NCBI RefSeq assembly: GCF_039654945.1
Contig: NW_027361741.1
Location: 35,216,001 to 35,280,000 of the forward strand
Direction: 5' to 3'
Source: Dendrobates tinctorius
Lineage: Eukaryota
DNA length: 64,000 bases
A program made the position numbers and the translations under genes. The notes under the pieces were generated by a model. It had not been told where the DNA came from and searched no databases. It saw only the letters and a list, made by a program, of their open reading frames with translations. Below are positions 1-60,834 of this stretch, piece by piece. The stretch's first letter is position 1; every line of letters starts with the position of its first letter.

Positions 1-2514
1 AAACTGGACACAATATTCCAGATGAGGTCTGACCAAAGAGGAGTAGAGGGAAATAATGACTTCACGTGATCTAGACTGTATGCTTCTGTTAATACATCCT
101 AGAATTGCATTTGCTTTTTTTGCTGCTGCATCACACTGTTGACTCATATTCAGTTTGTGATCTATTAGTATACCCAAGTCTTTTTCACATGTGCTGTTGC
201 TTAGGCCTATTCCTCCCATTCTGTATATGCTTTTTTCATTTTTATTGCCCAGATGTAGTACTTTGCATTTTTCCCTGTTAAAAACCATTCTGTTAGTTGC
301 TGCCCACTTCTCCAGTTTATTTATATCTTTTTGAATCCTCTCTCTCTCTTCTCTAGTATTAGCTATCCCTCCTAGCTTTGTGTCATCAGCAAATTTAATC
401 AGTTTACCCTCAATTCCTTCATCTAAATCGTTGATAAAGATGTTGAACAATAAAGGGCCCAGGAGAGAGTCCTGTGGTACCCCACTTGAGACATTCTTCC
501 AACTGGTTGTGCAGCCATTTATGACCACTCTTTGGGTCCGATCACTAAGCCAGTTATGAATCCACCTAACAGTTGCCTTGTCCATTCCATACTTAGTCAT
601 TTTTTCAATAAGGATTGTATGAGATACTTTGTCAAATGCTTTGCTGAAGTCAAGATATACTATATCTACAGCATTTCCTTGATCCACCCAATCAGTGATT
701 CCATCATAGAAGGAAATTAAGTTAGTCTGACATGACTTATTAGTTACAAACCCATGCTGACTCTGTTTAATCACTTCATTCTTATCCAGGTACTGACATA
801 CATGTTGTTTAATAATTTGTTCAAAGATCTTTCCTGGTATAGAAGTCAGACTCACCGGCCTATAGTTGCCTGGGTCCACCTTCTTCCCCTTTTTGAAGAT
901 AGGAACAACATTTGCTCTTCTCCAGTCTTCTGGGACTTCTCCTGTTCTCCAAGAATTTTCAAATATTATGGAGAGGGGTTCAAAAATTTCTTCTGCTATC
1001 TCCTTCAGTACTCTGGGGTGTAATTCATCTGGACCTGGAGACTTGAATTCATTTAGGTTAGCTAAGTGTTTCCTCACTATCTTTCTGTTTATAGATATCC
1101 TGGATTCTTCTATTCCCTTAATAGGACAGTGAAGAACAGTTGATGTCACATTTCCTTTCTGAGAGAAAACAGATGCAAAATAGGAATTTAAAAGTTCGGC
1201 CTTCTCAACATCCTGTCTTACCATTTCATCATTTTCATCCTGTAAAAATCCTATAGCATCTTTGACTTTTCTTTTACTTTTGACATATCCCCAAAATCCT
1301 TTATTATTGCTTTCGACATCTCTTGCAAGCCTCAATTCATTGTCAGCTTTAGCTAATCTGATTTGTGCCCTGCAGGTTCTGCAGACAGCATTATATTCTT
1401 CTTTAGATATGCCTCCCTCTTTCCATTTTATAAACATTTCTTTCTTCCTTTTTAGCATGTGCTTAAGTTCTATGTTCATCCATCCTGGCTTCCTTAAATG
1501 CTTCCTATTCTTCCCTCTTTTCGGAATTGTTAACAATTGTGCTTTGAGAATTTCATTTTTCAAGATTTCCCATCCTTCCTGGACATTTTTGTCTTTAAGG
1601 ATATCCAGCCATTGGATCCCTCCAATTCTCTTTCTGAATCCCTTAAAATCTGCCTTTCTGAAATCTAACCTTGACGTCTGAGTCTTCACAGGTCTTCCTC
1701 CTCTAGTTATCCAAAATTCTAAAATAGCATGGTCGCTACCTCCTAGGGTCCCAGCCACTTTTACCTCCTCAACCATTTCCTCCCTGTTTATAAGGATTAG
1801 ATCCAAGGTAGCAGTTCCCCTTGTTTTCTCCCCTACCTTTTGGAAGATAAAGTTGTCAGCAAGAGAGGATAAGAATTTCCTTGACCTGTTAGTTTTGCCT
1901 GAGAGAGATTCCCAACAAATGTCTGGATAGTTGAAATCTCCCATGACAACTATGTCATATTTTTGGGAGAACTTGGCCATTTGATGCATAAAGAGTTCAT
2001 CCATATCTTCAGCTTGCACAGGCGGCCTGTAGTAAATGCCTACAATGGTGTCCTTTCCATTGTTCTGTCCTTGTATTCTTACCCAAACAGTTTCCACAGA
2101 ACTCCCAGTCTCTGAAGCTTCAATCTCTGTGCAGATATACGCGTTTCTAACATACAATGCGACACCTCCTCCTCGTTTATCAAGTCTGTTTCTTGCAAAT
2201 AAGTTGTATCCTTCTAGTCTTGTATTCCAATCATGTGTATTGTCCCACCAAGTTTCAGTGATTCCAATGACATCATATTTCTTTTCCTGCGTTAGTGGTT
2301 CCAATTCTCCTTGTTTGTTGCCCATGCTTTGTGCATTAGTATAGAAACATTTTAGTTTGTGATTGGTTTCTCTTTCTCCAATATTTTTATTAATTAGATT
2401 CTTTTGTCTTTGTTCTTCCTTTCCACTTCTAATAGCAGAGTTCTCAATAGCATTTGTCAGGTGTATGGCTTTTTCTAGTCTTTTGCTTCCCTTCCCATGT
2501 TGTTCTAGTTTAAA
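1..2514 (-). CDS. CR1 ORF2 (APE endonuclease + reverse transcriptase), runs off window
   Basis: Reverse complement of the 701-aa ORF at 49151. First ATG is at 2325, but the frame is open from 2586. The A6 run near 231-236 keeps frame where copy 2 (A7) is frameshifted. No terminated minus-strand ORF is listed here, consistent with an open frame to position 1. Confidence 0.85.
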
Positions 2515-3467
2515 GCTCTCCTTACAAGTGTAGCAAGACGACTTCCAAATACATGTTTTCCAGTCTTCGTAAGGTGCACCCCATCTCTAGCAAGTAGTCC
2601 ATCGTAAAGGTACCTCACTCCGTGATCCAGAAATCCAAATCGTTGCTGACGGCACCATTGACGTAGCCAGTTGTTCACCTGCAGAATCTTATTCCACCTC
2701 CTTGTTCCATGGCCATCCACTGGGAGGATGGAAGAGAAGACCACCTGCGCTCCCAGTTCTTTCACTTTCTTGCCTAAGTCTTCAAAGTCTCTGCAGATGG
2801 TTTCCAGGTCGTTTCTTGCGGTGTCATTTGTCCCCACATGTAGTAGCAGGAATGGGTAGTCATCTGTAGATCTGAAGAGTCCTGATATCCTGTCAGACAC
2901 ATCTTTAATTTTTGCACCTGGAAGACAGCACATTTCTCTTGAAGTTATATCCGGTCTGCAGATAGCGGCCTCTGTTCCTCTCAACAGGGAATCCCCCATG
3001 ACCACCACTCTCCGTTTCTTCTTCACAACATTTTTCTTTCTCCATCCAGGAGGACTCTGAAGGCGTACAAGGTTGCTGTTTGTGGGCAAAGTCTTATCCT
3101 GATGTATTTCTTCATTGGTTTCCTGCGTGAGAGCCTGGCACTGGTTTCTGAGCAGTATGGGTGCTGACTGCCTCCTGATCCTCCTGCTTCTCTGGTTCAC
3201 ATGTCTCCATTCCTCTGTTTCTTCAGGTGCACTTCGAATTTCTTCTCTTTCTGTAACATGAAGAGATAATTCTGCTCTGTCCAAGAACTCTTCACCTTCC
3301 TTAATGATCTTCAACGTAGCTAACCTCTCTTCGAGACTTTGCAACTTTTCCTCCAACAGGGACACAAGCTTGCATTTGTGGCATGTGAAGTTTGGCTTTT
3401 CCACTGGTAAATCTGTGAACATGTAGCAAGAAATGCAGCTCACCAAATGGCTCCTGGCCTCTTCCAT
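2505..3467 (-). CDS. CR1 ORF1 protein (zinc finger, leucine zipper, SGNH/GDSL esterase-like domain)
   Basis: From ATG 3467: CISC..CHKC zinc finger, LLEEKLQSLEERLATL coiled coil, GDSL, GTND and DGVH motifs; ends RRALN*. Confidence 0.9.
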   Translation of the reverse strand: MEEARSHLVSCISCYMFTDLPVEKPNFTCHKCKLVSLLEEKLQSLEERLATLKIIKEGEEFLDRAELSLHVTEREEIRSAPEETEEWRHVNQRSRRIRRQSAPILLRNQCQALTQETNEEIHQDKTLPTNSNLVRLQSPPGWRKKNVVKKKRRVVVMGDSLLRGTEAAICRPDITSREMCCLPGAKIKDVSDRISGLFRSTDDYPFLLLHVGTNDTARNDLETICRDFEDLGKKVKELGAQVVFSSILPVDGHGTRRWNKILQVNNWLRQWCRQQRFGFLDHGVRYLYDGLLARDGVHLTKTGKHVFGSRLATLVRRALN

Positions 3468-3508
3468 ATTGAGATTTCTTAAAAACGATGAAAGATGAGT
3501 CAAAAATA

Positions 3509-3802
3509 TGGGAATATGCAGATGATCTCCTCAAGACTCTTCCCCTGGTTTTCCGATTTCCTCTTTTCAGCTGCAACAGCCAAAACCCAGTGATCGTTGA
3601 GCTCGCGGAGACTCTTCACTTATCCCAGAAGGCACTGGGAATATGCAGATGATCTCCTCAAGACTCTTCCCCTGGTTTTCCGATTTCCTCTTTTCAGCTG
3701 CAACAGCCAAAACCCAGTGATCGTTGAGCTCGCGGAGACTCTTCACTTATCCCAGAAGGCACTGGGAATATGCAGATGATCTCCTCAAGACTCTTCCCCT
3801 GG
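3509..3802. repeat. 127-bp tandem monomers (about 2.3 copies) in CR1 5' UTR
   Basis: tgggaatatgcagatgatctcctcaagactcttcccctgg recurs at 3509, 3636 and 3763. Confidence 0.92.
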
Positions 3803-25172: not shown

Positions 25173-25215
25173 TTTGCAGACACTGTTTTGGAGTACTGTC
25201 CCTCATCAGTGCAAA
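25173..25215 (-). ncRNA. Minimal type I hammerhead ribozyme motif, probably inactivated (G12A)
   Basis: UUUGCA CUGAUGA GGG acagua CUCC aAAA CAGUG UC UGCAAA: 6-bp stem I, CUGAUGA box, short stem II, GAAA mutated to AAAA, minimal stem III, GUC site. Confidence 0.7.
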
Positions 25216-48587: not shown

Positions 48588-51500
48588 CAGAATATCAGGA
48601 CTCTTCAGACATACAGATGACTACCCATTCCTGCTACTACATGTGGGGACAAATGACACCGCAAGAAACGACCTGGAAACCATCTGCGGAGACTTTGAAG
48701 ACTTAGGCAAGAAAGTGAAAGAACTGGGAGCGCAGGTGGTCTTCTCTTCCATCCTCCCAGTGGATGGTCATGGAACAAGGAGGTGGAATAAGATTCTGCA
48801 GGTGAACAACTGGCTACATCGATGGTGCCGTCAGCAACGATTTGGATTTCTGGATCACGGAGTGAACTACTTATACGATGGACTACTTGCTAGAGATGGA
48901 GTGCACCTTACGAAGACTGGAAAGCATGTATTTGGAAGTCGCCTTGCTACACTTGTAAGGAGAGCTTTAAACTAGAACAACATGGGAAGGGAAGCAAAAG
49001 ACCAGAAAAAGCCATACACCTGACAAATGCTATTGAGAACTCTGCTATTAGAAGTGGAAAGGAAGAACAAAGACGAAAGAATCTAATAAAAATATTGGAG
49101 AAAGAGAAACCAATCACAAACTAAAATGTTTCTATACTAATGCACAAAGCATGGGCAACAAACAAGGAGAATTGGAACTACTAACACAGGAAAAGAAATA
49201 TGATGTCATTGGAATCACTGAAACTTGGTGGGACAATACACATGATTGGAATACAAGGATAGAAGGATACAACTTATTTGCAAGAAACAGACTTGATAAA
49301 CGAGGAGGGGGTGTCGCATTGTATGTTAGAAACACGTATATCTGCACAGGGATTGAAGCTTCAGAGACTGGGAGTTCTGTGGAAACTGTTTGGGTAAGAA
49401 TACAAGGACAGAACAATGGAAAGGACACCATTGTAGGCATTTACTACAGGCCGCCTGTGCAAGCTGAAGATATGGATGAACTCTTTATGCATCAAATGGC
49501 CAAGTTCTCCAAAAAATATGACATAGTTGTCATGGGAGATTTCAACTATCCAGACATTTGTTGGGAATCTCTCTCAGGCAAAACTAACAGGTCAAGGAAA
49601 TTCTTATCCTCTCTTGCTGACAACTTTATCTTCCAAAAGGTAAGGGAGAAAACAAGGGGAACTGCTACCTTGGATCTAATCCTTATAAACAGGGAGGAAA
49701 TGGTTGAGGAGGTAAAAGTGGCTGGGACCCTAGGAGGTAGCGACCATGCTATTTTAGAATTTTGGATAACTAGAGGCGGAAGACCTGTGAAGACTCAGAC
49801 GTCAAGGTTAGATTTCAGAAAGGCAGATTTTAAGGGATTCAGAAAGAGAATTGGAGGGATCCAATGGCTGGATATCCTTAAAGACAAAAATGTCCAGGAA
49901 GGATGGGAAATCTTGAAAAATGAAATTCTCAAAGCACAGTTGTTATCAATTCCGAAAAGAGGGAAGAATAGGAAGCATTTAAGGAAACCAGGATGGATGA
50001 ACACAGAACTTAAGCACATGCTAAAAAGGAAGAAAAAAATGTTTATAAAATGGAAAGAGGGAGGCATATCTAAAGAAGAATATAATGCTGTCTGCAGAAC
50101 CTGCAGGGCACAAATCAGATTATCTAAAGCTGAAAATGAATTGAGGCTTGCAAGAGATGTCAAAAGCAATAATAAAGGATTTTGGGGATATGTCAAAAGT
50201 AAAAGAAAAGTCAAAGATGCTATAGGATTTTTACAGGATGAAAATTATGAAATGGTAAGACAGGATGTTGAGAAGGCTGAACTTTTAAATTCCTATTTTG
50301 CATCTGTTTTCTCTCAGAAAGGAAATGTAACATCAACTGTTATTCACTGTCCTATTAAGGGAATAGAAGAATCCAGGATATCTATAAACAGAAAGATAGT
50401 GAGGAAACACTTAGCTAACCTAAATGAATTCAAGTCTCCAGGTCCAGATGAATTACACCCCAGAATACTGAAGGAGATAGCAGAAGAAATTTTTGAACCC
50501 CTCTCCATAATCTTTGAAAATTCTTGGAGGAAAGGAGAAGTGCCAGAAGACTGGAGAAGAGCAAATGTTGTTCCTATCTTCAAAAAGGGGAAGAAGGTGG
50601 ACCTAGGCAACTATAGGCCGGTGAGTCTGACTTCTATACCAGGAAAGATCTTTGAACAAATTATTAAACAACATGTATGTCAATACCTGGATAAGAATGA
50701 AGTGATCAAACAGAGTCAGCATGGGTTTGGAACTAATAAGTCATGTCAGACTAACTTAATTTCCTTCTATGACGGTATCACTGATTGGGTGGATCAAGGA
50801 AATGCTGTAGATATAGTATATCTTGACTTCAGCAAAGCATTTGACAAAGTCTCTCATACAATCCTTATTGAAAAAATGACTAAGTATGGAATGGACAAGG
50901 CAACTGTTAGGTGGATTCATAACTGGCTTAGTGATCGGACCCAAAGCGTGGTTGTAAATGGCTGCACATCCAGTTGGAAGAATGTCTCAAGTGGGGTACC
51001 ACAGGGCTCTGTCCTGGGCCCTGTATTGTTCAACATCTTTATCAACGATTTAGATGAAAGAATTGAGGGTAAACTGATTAAATTTGCTGATGACACAAAG
51101 CTAGGAGGGATAGCTAATACTAGAGAAGAGAGAGAGAGGATTCAAAACGATTTAAATAAACTGGAGAAGTGGGCAGCAACTAACATAATGGTTTTTAACA
51201 GGGAGAAATGCAAAGTACTACATCAGGGCAATAAAAATGAAAAAAAGCATATATAGAATGGGAGGAATAGGGCTAAGTGACAGCACATGTGAAAAAGACT
51301 TGGGTATACTAATAGATCACAGACTGAATATGAGTCAACAGTGTGATGCAGCAGCAAAAAAGGCAAATGCAATTCTAGGATGTATTAAGAGAAGCATACA
51401 GTCTAGATCATGTGAAGTCATTATTTCCCTCTACTCCTCTTTGGTCAGACCTCATCTGGAATATTGTGTCCAGTCTTGGGCACCACATTTTAAAAAAGAC

Positions 51501-51953
51501 ATCAACAAACTGGAGCAAGTTCAGAAAAGAGCGACCAGAATGGTGACCGGTCTGCAAACCCTGTCTTATGAGGAAAGGTTGCAGGATTTGGGAATGTTTA
51601 GTTTGCAAAAGAGAAGACTGAGAGGAGACTTAATAGCTGTCTACAAATATCTAAAGGGCTGTCACATTGTAGAAGGATCAACTTTATTCTCATTTGCACA
51701 AGGAAAGACTAGAAGCAATGGGATGAAACTGAATGGGAGGAGACACAGATTAGAAAAAACTTTTTGACAGTTAGAGTGATCAATGAGTGGAACAGGCTGC
51801 CACGAGAAGTGGCGAGTTCTCCTTCAATGGAAGTCTTCAAACAGAGGCTGGACAGACATCTGACTGGGATGATTTAGCGAATCCTGCTTTGAGCAGGGGG
51901 TTGGACCAGATGGCCCAGGAGGTCCCTTCCAACTCTACGATTCTATGATTCTA
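48588..51953 (+). mobile_element. CR1 LINE, 5'-truncated, in SRSF9 intron 2 (antisense to host)
   Basis: ORF1 3' half (to 48975); ORF2 49151-51256 then frameshifted in an A7 run into 51237-51767; 3' tail ...ctacgattctatgattcta (ATTCTATG-type CR1 repeat). Confidence 0.96.
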
Positions 51954-60445: not shown

Positions 60446-60834
60446 NNNNNNNNNNNNNNNNNNNNNNNNNNNNNNNNNNNNNNNNNNNNNNNNNNNNNNN
60501 NNNNNNNNNNNNNNNNNNNNNNNNNNNNNNNNNNNNNNNNNNNNNNNNNNNNNNNNNNNNNNNNNNNNNNNNNNNNNNNNNNNNNNNNNNNNNNNNNNNN
60601 NNNNNNNNNNNNNNNNNNNNNNNNNNNNNNNNNNNNNNNNNNNNNNNNNNNNNNNNNNNNNNNNNNNNNNNNNNNNNNNNNNNNNNNNNNNNNNNNNNNN
60701 NNNNNNNNNNNNNNNNNNNNNNNNNNNNNNNNNNNNNNNNNNNNNNNNNNNNNNNNNNNNNNNNNNNNNNNNNNNNNNNNNNNNNNNNNNNNNNNNNNNN
60801 NNNNNNNNNNNNNNNNNNNNNNNNNNNNNNNNNN
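60446..60834. other. Assembly gap (389 N)
   Basis: Run of N. Confidence 1.

What the first reader, a model, noticed from the sequence alone, without database searches (positions are those of the whole stretch)
2325..2586. CR1 LINE ORF2 appears wired for -1 ribosomal frameshifting at a U_UUA_AAC slippery site
Seen: on the minus strand ORF1 ends AGA GCT TTA AAC TAG, so the heptamer T_TTA_AAC (2514-2508) is correctly phased and abuts the stop. The -1 frame from there reads through about 60 stop-free codons of A-rich linker (KLEQHGKGSKRLEKAIHLTNAIENSAIRSGKEEQRQKNLINKNIGERETNHKLKCFYTNAQS) into ORF2. That frame has no AUG between its upstream stop (2589-2587) and 2325, and the first APE-endonuclease motif (LKCFYTN) lies before that AUG. 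Established: U_UUA_AAC is the X_XXY_YYZ site used by coronaviruses, while ORF2 of well-studied LINEs such as L1 is usually explained by reinitiation. Inference: this CR1 makes an ORF1-ORF2 (gag-pol-like) fusion by -1 frameshifting. Caveats: I see no clear downstream pseudoknot (only GGGAAGGGAAG and the adjacent stop). The truncated copy keeps the heptamer (48966-48972) but lacks 4 nt (taat) in the linker, which breaks the -1 register. I cannot check whether this has already been reported for CR1.
Basis: partly seen in the sequence, partly recalled or inferred. Interest (0 to 1): 0.85.

Follow-up and report, generated by a model that had tools for sequence, protein, structure and literature searches.

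The report
Conserved -1 frameshift site in CR1
The junction between the two genes of this frog CR1 jumping element carries a slippery sequence (U_UUA_AAC plus a stop codon) that is kept base-for-base in related elements from rays to birds. CR1-type LINEs therefore most likely make their endonuclease/reverse transcriptase as a frameshifted fusion with the first protein, which I did not find described in the papers I could search.

Summary

**In the window.** A CR1 LINE lies on the minus strand. ORF1 (esterase type, 3467-2508) ends GCT TTA AAC TAG. The endonuclease/RT frame is -1 and open from 2586 to the window edge. It has no AUG before the first endonuclease motif.

**Within the family.** Thousands of contigs from three organisms show no common indel in the linker. 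The 4-nt loss in the second copy is therefore private.

**Across 20 diverged lineages** (ray, sturgeon, eel, frog, turtles, lizards, snake, alligator, birds):
- ORF1 ends NNT TTA AAC plus a stop, and the stop varies (TAG/TGA/TAA).
- The residue before Leu varies (A, T, S, G, Y, H), but its third base stays T.
- Leu is always the rare TTA, while nearby wobble bases vary freely.
- The linker (93-267 nt, unconserved) is open only in the -1 frame: 11 stops against 202 and 213.
- No conserved RNA structure follows. A G-run starts 10-13 nt after the heptamer in 17 of 20.

**Best reading.** This is an ancient -1 programmed frameshift that makes an ORF1-ORF2 fusion. It is untested experimentally. Two other first-stage notes flagged the same motif on other copies in this genome.

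The parts
2508..3467 (-). CR1 ORF1 coding sequence: 320 aa with a Cys-rich N-terminal part and an SGNH/GDSL esterase domain, ending ...VRRALN.
   Evidence: Translation. Pfam Lipase_GDSL_2. Matches the solved ZfL2-1 ORF1 esterase 4C1B at E 3.8e-22. 97% identical to a Dendrobates tinctorius protein.
2508..2514 (-). Slippery heptamer T_TTA_AAC, phased as GC[T TTA AAC] in the ORF1 frame. This is the proposed -1 shift site.
   Evidence: Conserved in 60 of 70 other copies and in lineages from ray to bird.
2505..2507 (-). ORF1 stop codon TAG, directly abutting the heptamer.
   Evidence: A stop sits at this exact place in 66 of 70 other copies, but its identity varies: TAG 50, TGA 13, TAA 3.
2486..2496 (-). 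G-rich tract GGGAAGGGAAG, starting 12 nt after the heptamer. Candidate 3' stimulator; role inferred.
   Evidence: A G-run starts 10-13 nt after the heptamer in 17 of 20 lineages, against a background of 0.009 GGGG starts per nt.
2356..2508 (-). Linker read in the -1 frame: 51 codons, LEQHGKGS...NHK, poorly conserved, with no stop and no ATG.
   Evidence: Linkers of 56 copies carry 11 stops in the -1 frame against 202 and 213 in the other two frames.
1..2355 (-). ORF2 body: the APE endonuclease starts at LKCFYTNAQS and is followed by the reverse transcriptase. It is open to the window edge.
   Evidence: Pfam Exo_endo_phos, Exo_endo_phos_2 and RVT_1. tblastn to other CR1 loci.
2515..2586 (-). 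Part of the -1 frame that is open upstream of the heptamer (24 codons, no ATG). Probably not translated in that frame.
   Evidence: In other lineages this open stretch shrinks to 1-8 codons.
2323..2325 (-). First ATG of the ORF2 frame. It lies inside the endonuclease domain, after the YTNAQS motif.
   Evidence: The matching residue is Leu in turtle, snake and alligator elements, so this Met is not conserved.
3509..3802 (-). Tandem repeat (about 127-nt period) in the 5' part of the element. It runs from just 5' of the ORF1 ATG at 3467 to 3802.
   Evidence: Self-BLAST. Repeating 5' subunits in CR1-group elements are described in PMC13343379.
48588..51953 (+). Second, 5'-truncated copy of the same CR1 (97.4% identical). 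Heptamer at 48966-48972. It lacks 4 nt in the linker near 49083-49087, has a further frame break in the RT region, and ends in an 8-nt microsatellite.

Best explanation
The ORF1-ORF2 junction of this CR1 LINE is a programmed -1 ribosomal frameshift cassette.

Most ribosomes translating ORF1 read ...GCU UUA AAC, terminate at the abutting stop, and release the esterase-type ORF1 protein ending ...ALN. A minority slip one base back while UUA and AAC sit in the P and A sites, re-pairing on UUU and AAA. Possibly a second chance arises when AAC is in the P site and the slowly decoded stop is in the A site. These ribosomes then read CUA (Leu), the 51-codon linker, and the endonuclease/reverse transcriptase.

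The result is an ORF1-linker-ORF2 fusion (...ALN-LEQH...) at a low ratio to ORF1p, in the gag / gag-pol manner.

**Shown:**
- the geometry of the site;
- the family-wide -1 register;
- nucleotide-level conservation of NNU UUA AAC plus a stop across jawed-vertebrate esterase-ORF1 LINEs;
- a linker that is open only in the -1 frame;
- the lack of a conserved AUG.

**Inferred:**
- that slippage actually happens, and how efficiently;
- that the adjacent stop and the G-run 10-13 nt downstream act as stimulators in place of an RNA structure.
For: **1. Geometry in the window.**

**2. Family level.** No indel at 5% or more in 2200-2900, and no variant in the heptamer or stop, among thousands of contigs from three organisms. 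A subfamily does vary in the two codons just upstream, including synonymous changes.

**3. Cross-lineage DNA.** The ORF1 end is GCT TTA AAC plus a stop in Chelydra, Pelodiscus, Zootoca, a snake, Alligator and Grus. It is also so in 59 of 70 copies overall. Other lineages read:
- ACT TTA AAC in Varanus;
- TCT in L029;
- GGT in the ray Narcine, TAT in an eel, CAT in a sturgeon.

**4. Synonymous-site signal.**
- In the 29 codons upstream, Leu is TTA in 5 of 100 cases, Ala is GCT in 8 of 34, and Asn is AAC in 7 of 12.
- The last three codons are nevertheless fixed.
- Wobble conservation is 0.29-0.76 upstream against 0.94, 1.0 and 1.0 in the last three codons.

**5. Protein tails.** Among 88 distinct database ORF1 tails ending LN, 13 different residues occur at -3. 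Only 2 tails have a residue lacking an NNT codon, against a 20% background (binomial P about 8e-7). At -4 such residues make up 33%.

**6. ORF2 frame.**
- ORF2 is in the -1 frame in 55 of 64 copies.
- The linker is 93-267 nt, always a multiple of three, and unconserved.
- It carries 11 stops in the -1 frame against 202 and 213 in the other frames.
- The -1 frame is closed 1-2 codons before the heptamer in several lineages and holds no ATG there.
- The only nearby Met, in SMGNKQ, is Leu elsewhere.

**7. Literature.**
- U_UUA_AAC is among the most shift-prone heptamers on mammalian ribosomes (PMC5009743).
- A zero-frame stop 3 nt 3' of the shift site is needed for -1 shifting in PEMV (PMC5009743).
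- A linear motif 11 nt downstream stimulates PRRSV frameshifting through bound protein.

**8. G-run.** It starts at +10 to +13 in 17 of 20 lineages.
Against: - No conserved hairpin or pseudoknot follows the site. RNAalifold finds 0 pairs, and the 100 nt downstream fold no better than shuffles, with z from +2.0 to -1.5. There is no Rfam match.
- Two lineages have G instead of T as the first base of the heptamer. One is L089 (GAG TTA AAC), whose -1 frame is still open to the endonuclease. The other is the decayed Ranitomeya copy L001.
- The G-run also encodes Gly-x-Gly in the -1 frame, so part of its conservation could be at the peptide level.
- The LINEs whose ORF2 translation has been studied (L1, SART1) use termination-dependent reinitiation, not frameshifting (PMC2881922; PMC3894237).
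- No trans-frame peptide, ribosome profiling or reporter data were available.
- Most loci are single genomic copies, some of them decayed. Many come from one metagenome host, so the lineages are not fully independent.
Confidence: 0.78

Rival explanations
1. Termination-reinitiation, as in SART1 or L1. The ribosome ends ORF1 at the stop, the 40S subunit stays on the RNA, and it restarts without an AUG in the -1 frame nearby. The conserved TTAAAC-stop and the GGGA-containing G-run would then be retention signals, similar to the UGGGA core of calicivirus TURBS (the TURBS comparison is from my own knowledge, not from a paper read here).
For: - ORF2 translation that depends on ORF1 translation is the established mode in the studied LINEs (PMC2881922; PMC3894237).
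- A stop sits at exactly the same place in 66 of 70 copies, with variable identity.
- There is no RNA structure of the kind usual for frameshifting.
- The G-run often contains GGGGA or UGGGA.
Against: - There is no AUG at or near the stop in the -1 frame in any lineage.
- This model does not explain why the conserved block is, in the right phase, one of about 30 canonical slippery heptamers out of 16,384.
- It does not explain why the base before TTA stays T while the amino acid changes.
- The known retention motifs lie upstream of the restart site, whereas the G-run lies downstream of the stop.
Confidence: 0.1
2. Independent internal initiation at a non-AUG codon (or an IRES) inside the linker. 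ORF2p would be made separately, and the heptamer would be unrelated to ORF2 expression.
For: - The review PMC3894237 raises IRES-type initiation as a possibility for LINE ORF2.
- The linker is long enough in some lineages, up to 267 nt.
Against: - The -1 frame is stop-free right from the heptamer in all intact lineages. In the first 16 codons of 15 representatives it has 1 stop, against 9 and 25 in the other frames.
- The linker varies from 93 to 267 nt with no conserved sequence or structure apart from the G-run.
- Linker lengths are always multiples of three measured from the heptamer.
Confidence: 0.05
3. There is no recoding signal. The ORF1 protein simply needs a C-terminal ...ALN, and the heptamer is a by-product or a chance match.
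For: The C-terminal LN is conserved at the protein level in 141 database ORF1 proteins.
Against: - Protein-level selection would leave the codons free to vary. Instead Leu is always TTA (5% of Leu codons nearby) and Asn is always AAC.
- The residue at -3 varies among 13 amino acids, yet keeps a T-ending codon wherever DNA was read.
- ORF2 would be left without any means of translation.
Confidence: 0.02

Closest known systems
Coronavirus ORF1a/1b -1 frameshift site (IBV, SARS-CoV: U_UUA_AAC plus pseudoknot)
   Same: It uses the identical heptamer in the same phase, and the downstream polymerase-type ORF is in the -1 frame without its own start codon. U_UUA_AAC is listed among the most shift-prone heptamers for mammalian ribosomes (PMC5009743).
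   Different: No pseudoknot or hairpin is conserved here. The zero-frame stop abuts the heptamer. The host is a cellular retrotransposon, not an RNA virus.
Gag-pol -1 frameshifting of retroviruses and of LTR-retrotransposon-derived genes (for example PEG10; its heptamer G_GGA_AAC is quoted from my own knowledge)
   Same: The logic is the same. An abundant first protein and a rare fusion carrying the enzymes are made from one RNA, with the ratio set by slippage.
   Different: CR1 is a non-LTR element with no protease to cut the fusion. Its first protein is an esterase-type ORF1p, not a capsid protein.
Dictyostelium non-LTR retrotransposons TRE5-A and TRE3-A
   Same: These are non-LTR elements with APE and RT in ORF2. 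They are stated to require a -1 frameshift for ORF2 translation (PMC5911963).
   Different: They are an unrelated clade in an amoeba. I could not check their shift site. No deep conservation of a canonical heptamer is reported in the text I read.
SART1 (UAAUG stop-start coupling) and mammalian L1 (unconventional reinitiation)
   Same: These are bicistronic LINE RNAs whose ORF2 translation depends on ribosomes that have translated ORF1.
   Different: Those systems make a separate ORF2p by restarting. SART1 has an AUG overlapping the stop. CR1 has no AUG and has a phased slippery heptamer.
PRRSV -2/-1 frameshifting stimulated by protein bound to a linear motif, and the PEMV site with a nearby stop
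   Same: In PRRSV an unstructured motif 11 nt 3' of the shift site acts through bound proteins. In PEMV a zero-frame stop 3 nt after the site is required, and any of the three stops works. CR1 has a G-run 10-13 nt downstream and an abutting stop of variable identity.
   Different: The PRRSV motif is C-rich and its binders are known. For CR1 no binder is known and the role of the G-run is only inferred.

Membership tests
Canonical -1 programmed ribosomal frameshift site | Slippery heptamer X_XXY_YYZ in the phase of the upstream frame | tested here: met
   T_TTA_AAC is phased as GCT TTA AAC at 2514-2508.
Canonical -1 programmed ribosomal frameshift site | Downstream ORF in the -1 frame, open from the site, with no usable start codon of its own | tested here: met
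   The -1 frame is open from 2586 to base 1. Its first ATG lies inside the endonuclease domain and is not conserved.
Canonical -1 programmed ribosomal frameshift site | Heptamer conserved at synonymous positions among diverged relatives | tested here: met
   TTAAAC is invariant in 17 lineages, and the first T is kept through six different amino acids.
Canonical -1 programmed ribosomal frameshift site | Stimulatory RNA structure (hairpin or pseudoknot) 5-9 nt downstream | tested here: not met
   RNAalifold finds 0 pairs. No fold is better than shuffles. There is no Rfam match. A conserved G-run at +10 to +13 is present instead.
Canonical -1 programmed ribosomal frameshift site | Trans-frame protein product demonstrated | not testable with these tools
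   No proteomic or ribosome-profiling data were reachable.
CR1-group LINE with esterase-type ORF1 | ORF1 with an SGNH/GDSL esterase domain | tested here: met
   Pfam Lipase_GDSL_2. Match to the ZfL2-1 ORF1 esterase 4C1B.
CR1-group LINE with esterase-type ORF1 | ORF2 with an APE endonuclease followed by a reverse transcriptase | tested here: met
   Pfam Exo_endo_phos and RVT_1. 46-61% identity to reptile CR1 ORF2 over most of its length, lower (about 42%) over part of the Grus copy.
CR1-group LINE with esterase-type ORF1 | 3' end with a short (8-nt) microsatellite | tested here: met
   Copy B ends in TCTACGAT x2.5 at 51934-51953. The 3' end of copy A lies outside the window.
Stop-start translational coupling (SART1 UAAUG type) | AUG overlapping or next to the ORF1 stop, in the ORF2 frame | tested here: not met
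   There is no ATG in the -1 frame near the stop in any lineage.

The most novel reading that the evidence does not exclude
All esterase-ORF1 LINEs of the CR1 group in jawed vertebrates would express their endonuclease/RT only as an ORF1p-ORF2p fusion. These elements are the dominant retrotransposons of birds, crocodilians, turtles and snakes. The fusion would come from a structure-independent -1 frameshift cassette: NNU_UUA_AAC, an abutting stop of any identity, a 10-nt spacer and a G-run. The cassette would have been kept since before the split of cartilaginous and bony fishes. The G-run would work as a linear, perhaps protein-bound, stimulator.
Probability: 0.6. Interest if true: 0.92.

Novelty: new variant of a known kind. 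Interest (0 to 1): 0.85.

Why it matters
How LINEs translate ORF2 is an open question. The reviews I read call it unresolved. The only studied cases restart translation and make a separate ORF2p.

A deeply conserved, canonical slippery site in CR1-type elements would show three things:
- A major vertebrate LINE group uses the retroviral gag / gag-pol strategy.
- Its active enzyme is probably an esterase-linker-EN-RT fusion.
- The ORF1p to ORF2p ratio is set by slippage.

It would also add one of the oldest and most widespread cellular -1 frameshift signals in vertebrates. That signal appears to work without an RNA structure.

There are practical consequences as well:
- "Intact CR1" should be defined by the heptamer and the -1 register, not by an ATG-started ORF2.
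- Gene predictors mis-annotate these junctions.
- The short cassette is directly testable in a reporter.

Tried and rejected
**Downstream RNA structure**
- RNAalifold on 15 lineages found no pairs.
- Single-sequence folds with shuffles gave no signal, and the frog sequence was less stable than its shuffles.
- An Rfam scan gave only a chance-level hit.

**G-quadruplex.** The frog tract has only two G-tracts, so an intramolecular quadruplex is unlikely. This was judged by reading the sequence.

**Other routes to ORF2, rejected from the sequence**
- Transcriptional slippage: the longest runs are T3 and A3.
- Stop-codon read-through: ORF2 is not in frame 0, and frame 0 closes again after 9 codons.
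- Splicing: a donor-like AGGTAAGT lies in the turtle linkers. It is downstream of the ORF1 stop and absent in frog and birds.

**Literature**
- Seven full-text searches and several papers gave no report linking CR1 to UUUAAAC or to frameshifting.
- Three papers were not held: PMC1190309 (Kojima 2005), PMC7528939 (Kapitonov and Jurka 2003), and my guessed id for Wicker 2005.
- The original CR1 ORF papers of 1997 (Haas; Kajikawa) are not in the library. An earlier remark on the -1 overlap cannot be excluded.

**Other dead ends**
- A PDB sequence search with the endonuclease part found nothing.
- I tried to read the last two residues of the ZfL2-1 ORF1p chain (4C1B), but the alignments stop short of them.
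- The homolog search with P0262 was largely wasted. That gene model is a Myc-esterase chimera.
- Expression: no run is on record as RNA. One run guessed to be RNA holds a 1,059-nt contig spanning 2200-2900 without gaps. This is not evidence of translation.
Full report
**What is in the window**

On the minus strand lies a CR1-type LINE that runs off the window start.
- ORF1 (3467-2508, 320 aa) carries a GDSL/SGNH esterase domain. It matches the solved esterase of the zebrafish ZfL2-1 ORF1 protein.
- ORF1 ends AGA GCT TTA AAC TAG.
- The frame one base back is open from 2586 to base 1. It encodes the APE endonuclease, starting LKCFYTNAQS at 2355, and the reverse transcriptase.
- That frame has no ATG until 2325, which is already past the first endonuclease motif.
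- The 51 codons between the heptamer and the endonuclease are an A-rich linker without stops.

The closest database protein (97%) is from Dendrobates tinctorius, so the genome is that frog or a near relative.

**The second copy and the family**

A 5'-truncated copy on the plus strand (48588 to about 51953, 97.4% identical) keeps the heptamer. It lacks one TAAT of a TAAT-TAAT repeat in the linker, has another frame break in the RT, and ends in the 8-nt microsatellite typical of CR1.

To see which linker length is the family's, I laid the contigs of four public runs from three coded organisms on 2200-2900, thousands of them at 85% likeness or more.
- No insertion or deletion reaches 5% anywhere.
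- No substitution reaches 5% in the heptamer or the stop.
- A minority subfamily differs in the two codons just upstream, including synonymous changes.

The -1 register of the window copy is therefore the family norm. Young copies share most bases anyway, so this step says nothing about selection.

**Deep comparison**

I fetched genomic loci around ORF1 homologs from the following:
- Ranitomeya;
- two turtles;
- a lacertid lizard and Varanus;
- a snake;
- Alligator;
- a crane;
- an unknown host.

I also fetched 80 loci from metagenome contigs, almost all from one host-contaminated sample with several bird-like CR1 subfamilies. Later I added a ray, an eel and a sturgeon. ORF1 proteins of these lineages are roughly 33-63% identical to the frog's.

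The results are these.
- Of 70 non-window copies whose ORF1 end could be placed, 60 have TTTAAAC in phase.
- 66 have a stop directly after it (TAG 50, TGA 13, TAA 3), and 59 have both.
- ORF2 is in the -1 frame in 55 of the 64 copies where the endonuclease start was found.
- The -1 frame is unbroken from heptamer to endonuclease in 48 of those 55.
- The exceptions look like decayed copies: a lost stop, indels, or the alligator copy with an indel in the linker.

**Nucleotide-level, not protein-level, conservation**

Among 18 representatives, the 87 nt upstream are on average 56% identical.
- Conserved Leu, Gly and Ala columns use their codons freely.
- The last three codons are GCT TTA AAC in 14 representatives and TCT TTA AAC in one more.
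- In the preceding 29 codons TTA is 5 of 100 Leu codons, GCT 8 of 34 Ala codons, and AAC 7 of 12 Asn codons.
- Across 17 lineages, wobble positions upstream are 29-76% conserved. Those of the last three codons are 94, 100 and 100%. The block TTAAAC plus the T of the stop is invariant.

Where the amino acid before Leu differs, its third base is still T:
- ACT in Varanus;
- TCT in one bird-like subfamily;
- GGT in the ray;
- TAT in the eel;
- CAT in the sturgeon.

At the protein level, 88 distinct ORF1 tails ending LN show 13 different residues at -3. These include proteins from catshark, sawshark, Xenopus and Leptobrachium; a chimaera (Callorhinchus) tail reads ...RALNY and falls outside that set. 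Only 2 tails have a residue that cannot be encoded NNT, against a 20% background. At -4 such residues make up a third.

The stop codon is fixed in place but free in identity. This is the pattern expected if the RNA sequence U_UUA_AAC followed by any stop is what selection sees. It explains why the protein ends LN, rather than the reverse.

**The linker is translated in the -1 frame from the heptamer on**

- Linker length varies (93, 129, 138, 153, 165, 174, 210, 219, 231 and 267 nt counted from the last base of the heptamer). It is always a multiple of three.
- Linker sequence is not conserved.
- In 56 copies it holds 11 stops in the -1 frame, against 202 and 213 in the other two frames.
- In the first 16 codons of 15 representatives the counts are 1, 9 and 25.
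- Upstream, the -1 frame is closed only 1-2 codons before the heptamer in several bird-like lineages and 5 codons before it in Pelodiscus and Alligator. It holds no ATG there.
- The Met of SMGNKQ, the first in the frog ORF2 frame, is Leu in turtle, snake and alligator.

Ribosomes must therefore enter the -1 frame within a few bases of the heptamer and without an AUG.

**What stimulates the shift**

There is no conserved structure.
- RNAalifold predicts no pair in the 70 nt after the site.
- The first 100 nt fold no better than shuffled sequence in ten lineages, with z from +2.0 to -1.5.
- Rfam has nothing.

Two other features are conserved.
- The stop abuts the heptamer.
- A G-run (GGGAAGGGAAG in the frog, GGGGGAAGGGGA in birds, similar in ray and sturgeon) starts 10-13 nt after the heptamer in 17 of 20 lineages. 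The background is 0.009 GGGG starts per nt.

Part of the G-run conservation could be the Gly-x-Gly it encodes. However, by my reading of the sequences printed, the first Gly codon is GGG in most lineages.

Precedents from the review PMC5009743:
- a nearby zero-frame stop is required for -1 shifting in PEMV, whichever stop it is;
- PRRSV uses a linear motif 11 nt downstream, bound by proteins, instead of a structure;
- natural use of G-rich stimulators was anticipated but not known in 2016.

My inference is a low-efficiency, structure-independent site. A LINE needs very little ORF2p, so this would be enough. The stop may give a second chance for the Asn tRNA to slip from AAC to AAA. These points are not shown.

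**Rivals**

- *Termination-reinitiation,* as in SART1 and L1, fits the fixed position of the stop and the lack of structure. It does not explain a phased canonical heptamer, nor the T kept before TTA.
- *Internal non-AUG initiation* does not explain the stop-free -1 frame right from the heptamer.
- *Protein-level conservation of ALN* is contradicted by the codon data.
- *Transcriptional slippage, read-through and splicing* do not fit the sequence.

Points that lower confidence:
- two lineages with G as the first heptamer base;
- the absence of any experimental or peptide evidence;
- the partial dependence among the sampled copies.

**Known or new**

Minus-one frameshifting at U_UUA_AAC is textbook for coronaviruses. 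Gag-pol frameshifting is the rule in many retroelements. Dictyostelium non-LTR elements are said to need a -1 shift.

For CR1 I found nothing.
- Searches combining the heptamer, frameshifting, CR1, LINE and ORF1/ORF2 returned no relevant paper.
- In the part of the large 2016 frameshifting review that is held, CR1 does not occur and the only non-LTR elements discussed are HeT-A, TART and L1.
- Recent CR1 surveys do not discuss ORF2 translation.
- The 1997-2003 papers that first described CR1 ORFs could not be read. A passing remark there on the -1 overlap cannot be excluded.
- Two other first-stage notes of this scan flagged the same motif on other copies in this genome. They repeat the idea rather than supply independent evidence.

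**Verdict**

The feature is real. The comparative result goes well beyond the single copy: the cassette appears to be a shared, ancient trait of esterase-ORF1 CR1-group LINEs. It needs a reporter assay and a junction peptide to be proven.

Noticed in passing
window 3509-3802 (minus strand): The 5' part of the CR1 copy holds a tandem repeat with a period of about 127 nt: 167-nt blocks repeated at that offset, 100% identical. This matches the repeating 5' subunits reported for CR1-group elements.
   Followed up: partly
(P0004 Salvator merianae; L003 Zootoca; L001 Ranitomeya): The frog ORF1 is 69% identical to a tegu lizard protein, and its ORF2 is 61% identical to a lacertid CR1. The related poison frog Ranitomeya gives 62-63% for ORF1 but only 37% for ORF2. 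This suggests ORF1/ORF2 mosaicism or horizontal transfer between squamates and dendrobatid frogs.
   Followed up: no
L002:4045-4055 and L007:6868-6878: The turtle CR1 linkers carry a perfect splice-donor-like AGGTAAGT about 30 nt after the ORF1 stop. It is read as (E/Q)-V-S in the -1 frame. It is absent in frog and birds.
   Followed up: no
proteins P0262, P0047, P0049, P0084, P0079, P0081: Many database gene models fuse CR1 ORF1 to host genes (Myc, NUBP1, steryl-sulfatase, shisa-4) or name it 'Replicase polyprotein 1a'. These are annotation artefacts caused by this abundant ORF.
   Followed up: no
L089:1617-1640: One lineage from an unknown host (ORF1 ending RRELN, two protein clusters) has GAG TTA AAC TGA, so the first heptamer base is G. 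Its -1 frame is still open into the endonuclease. It is a natural variant worth testing for shift efficiency.
   Followed up: partly
window 60446-60834: Run of 389 N (assembly gap or masked stretch). Left untouched.
   Followed up: no
window 25173-25215: Another first-stage note on this window reports a minimal hammerhead ribozyme relic between COX6A1 and TRIAP1. I did not examine it.
   Followed up: no
window 2477 (minus strand): The window copy has T where nearly all family contigs and copy B have C. This makes a TAG in the ORF1 frame 10 codons after the real stop. Several other private substitutions sit at 2538, 2607, 2613-2614 and 2659. None touches the heptamer, the stop or the -1 frame.
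   Followed up: partly
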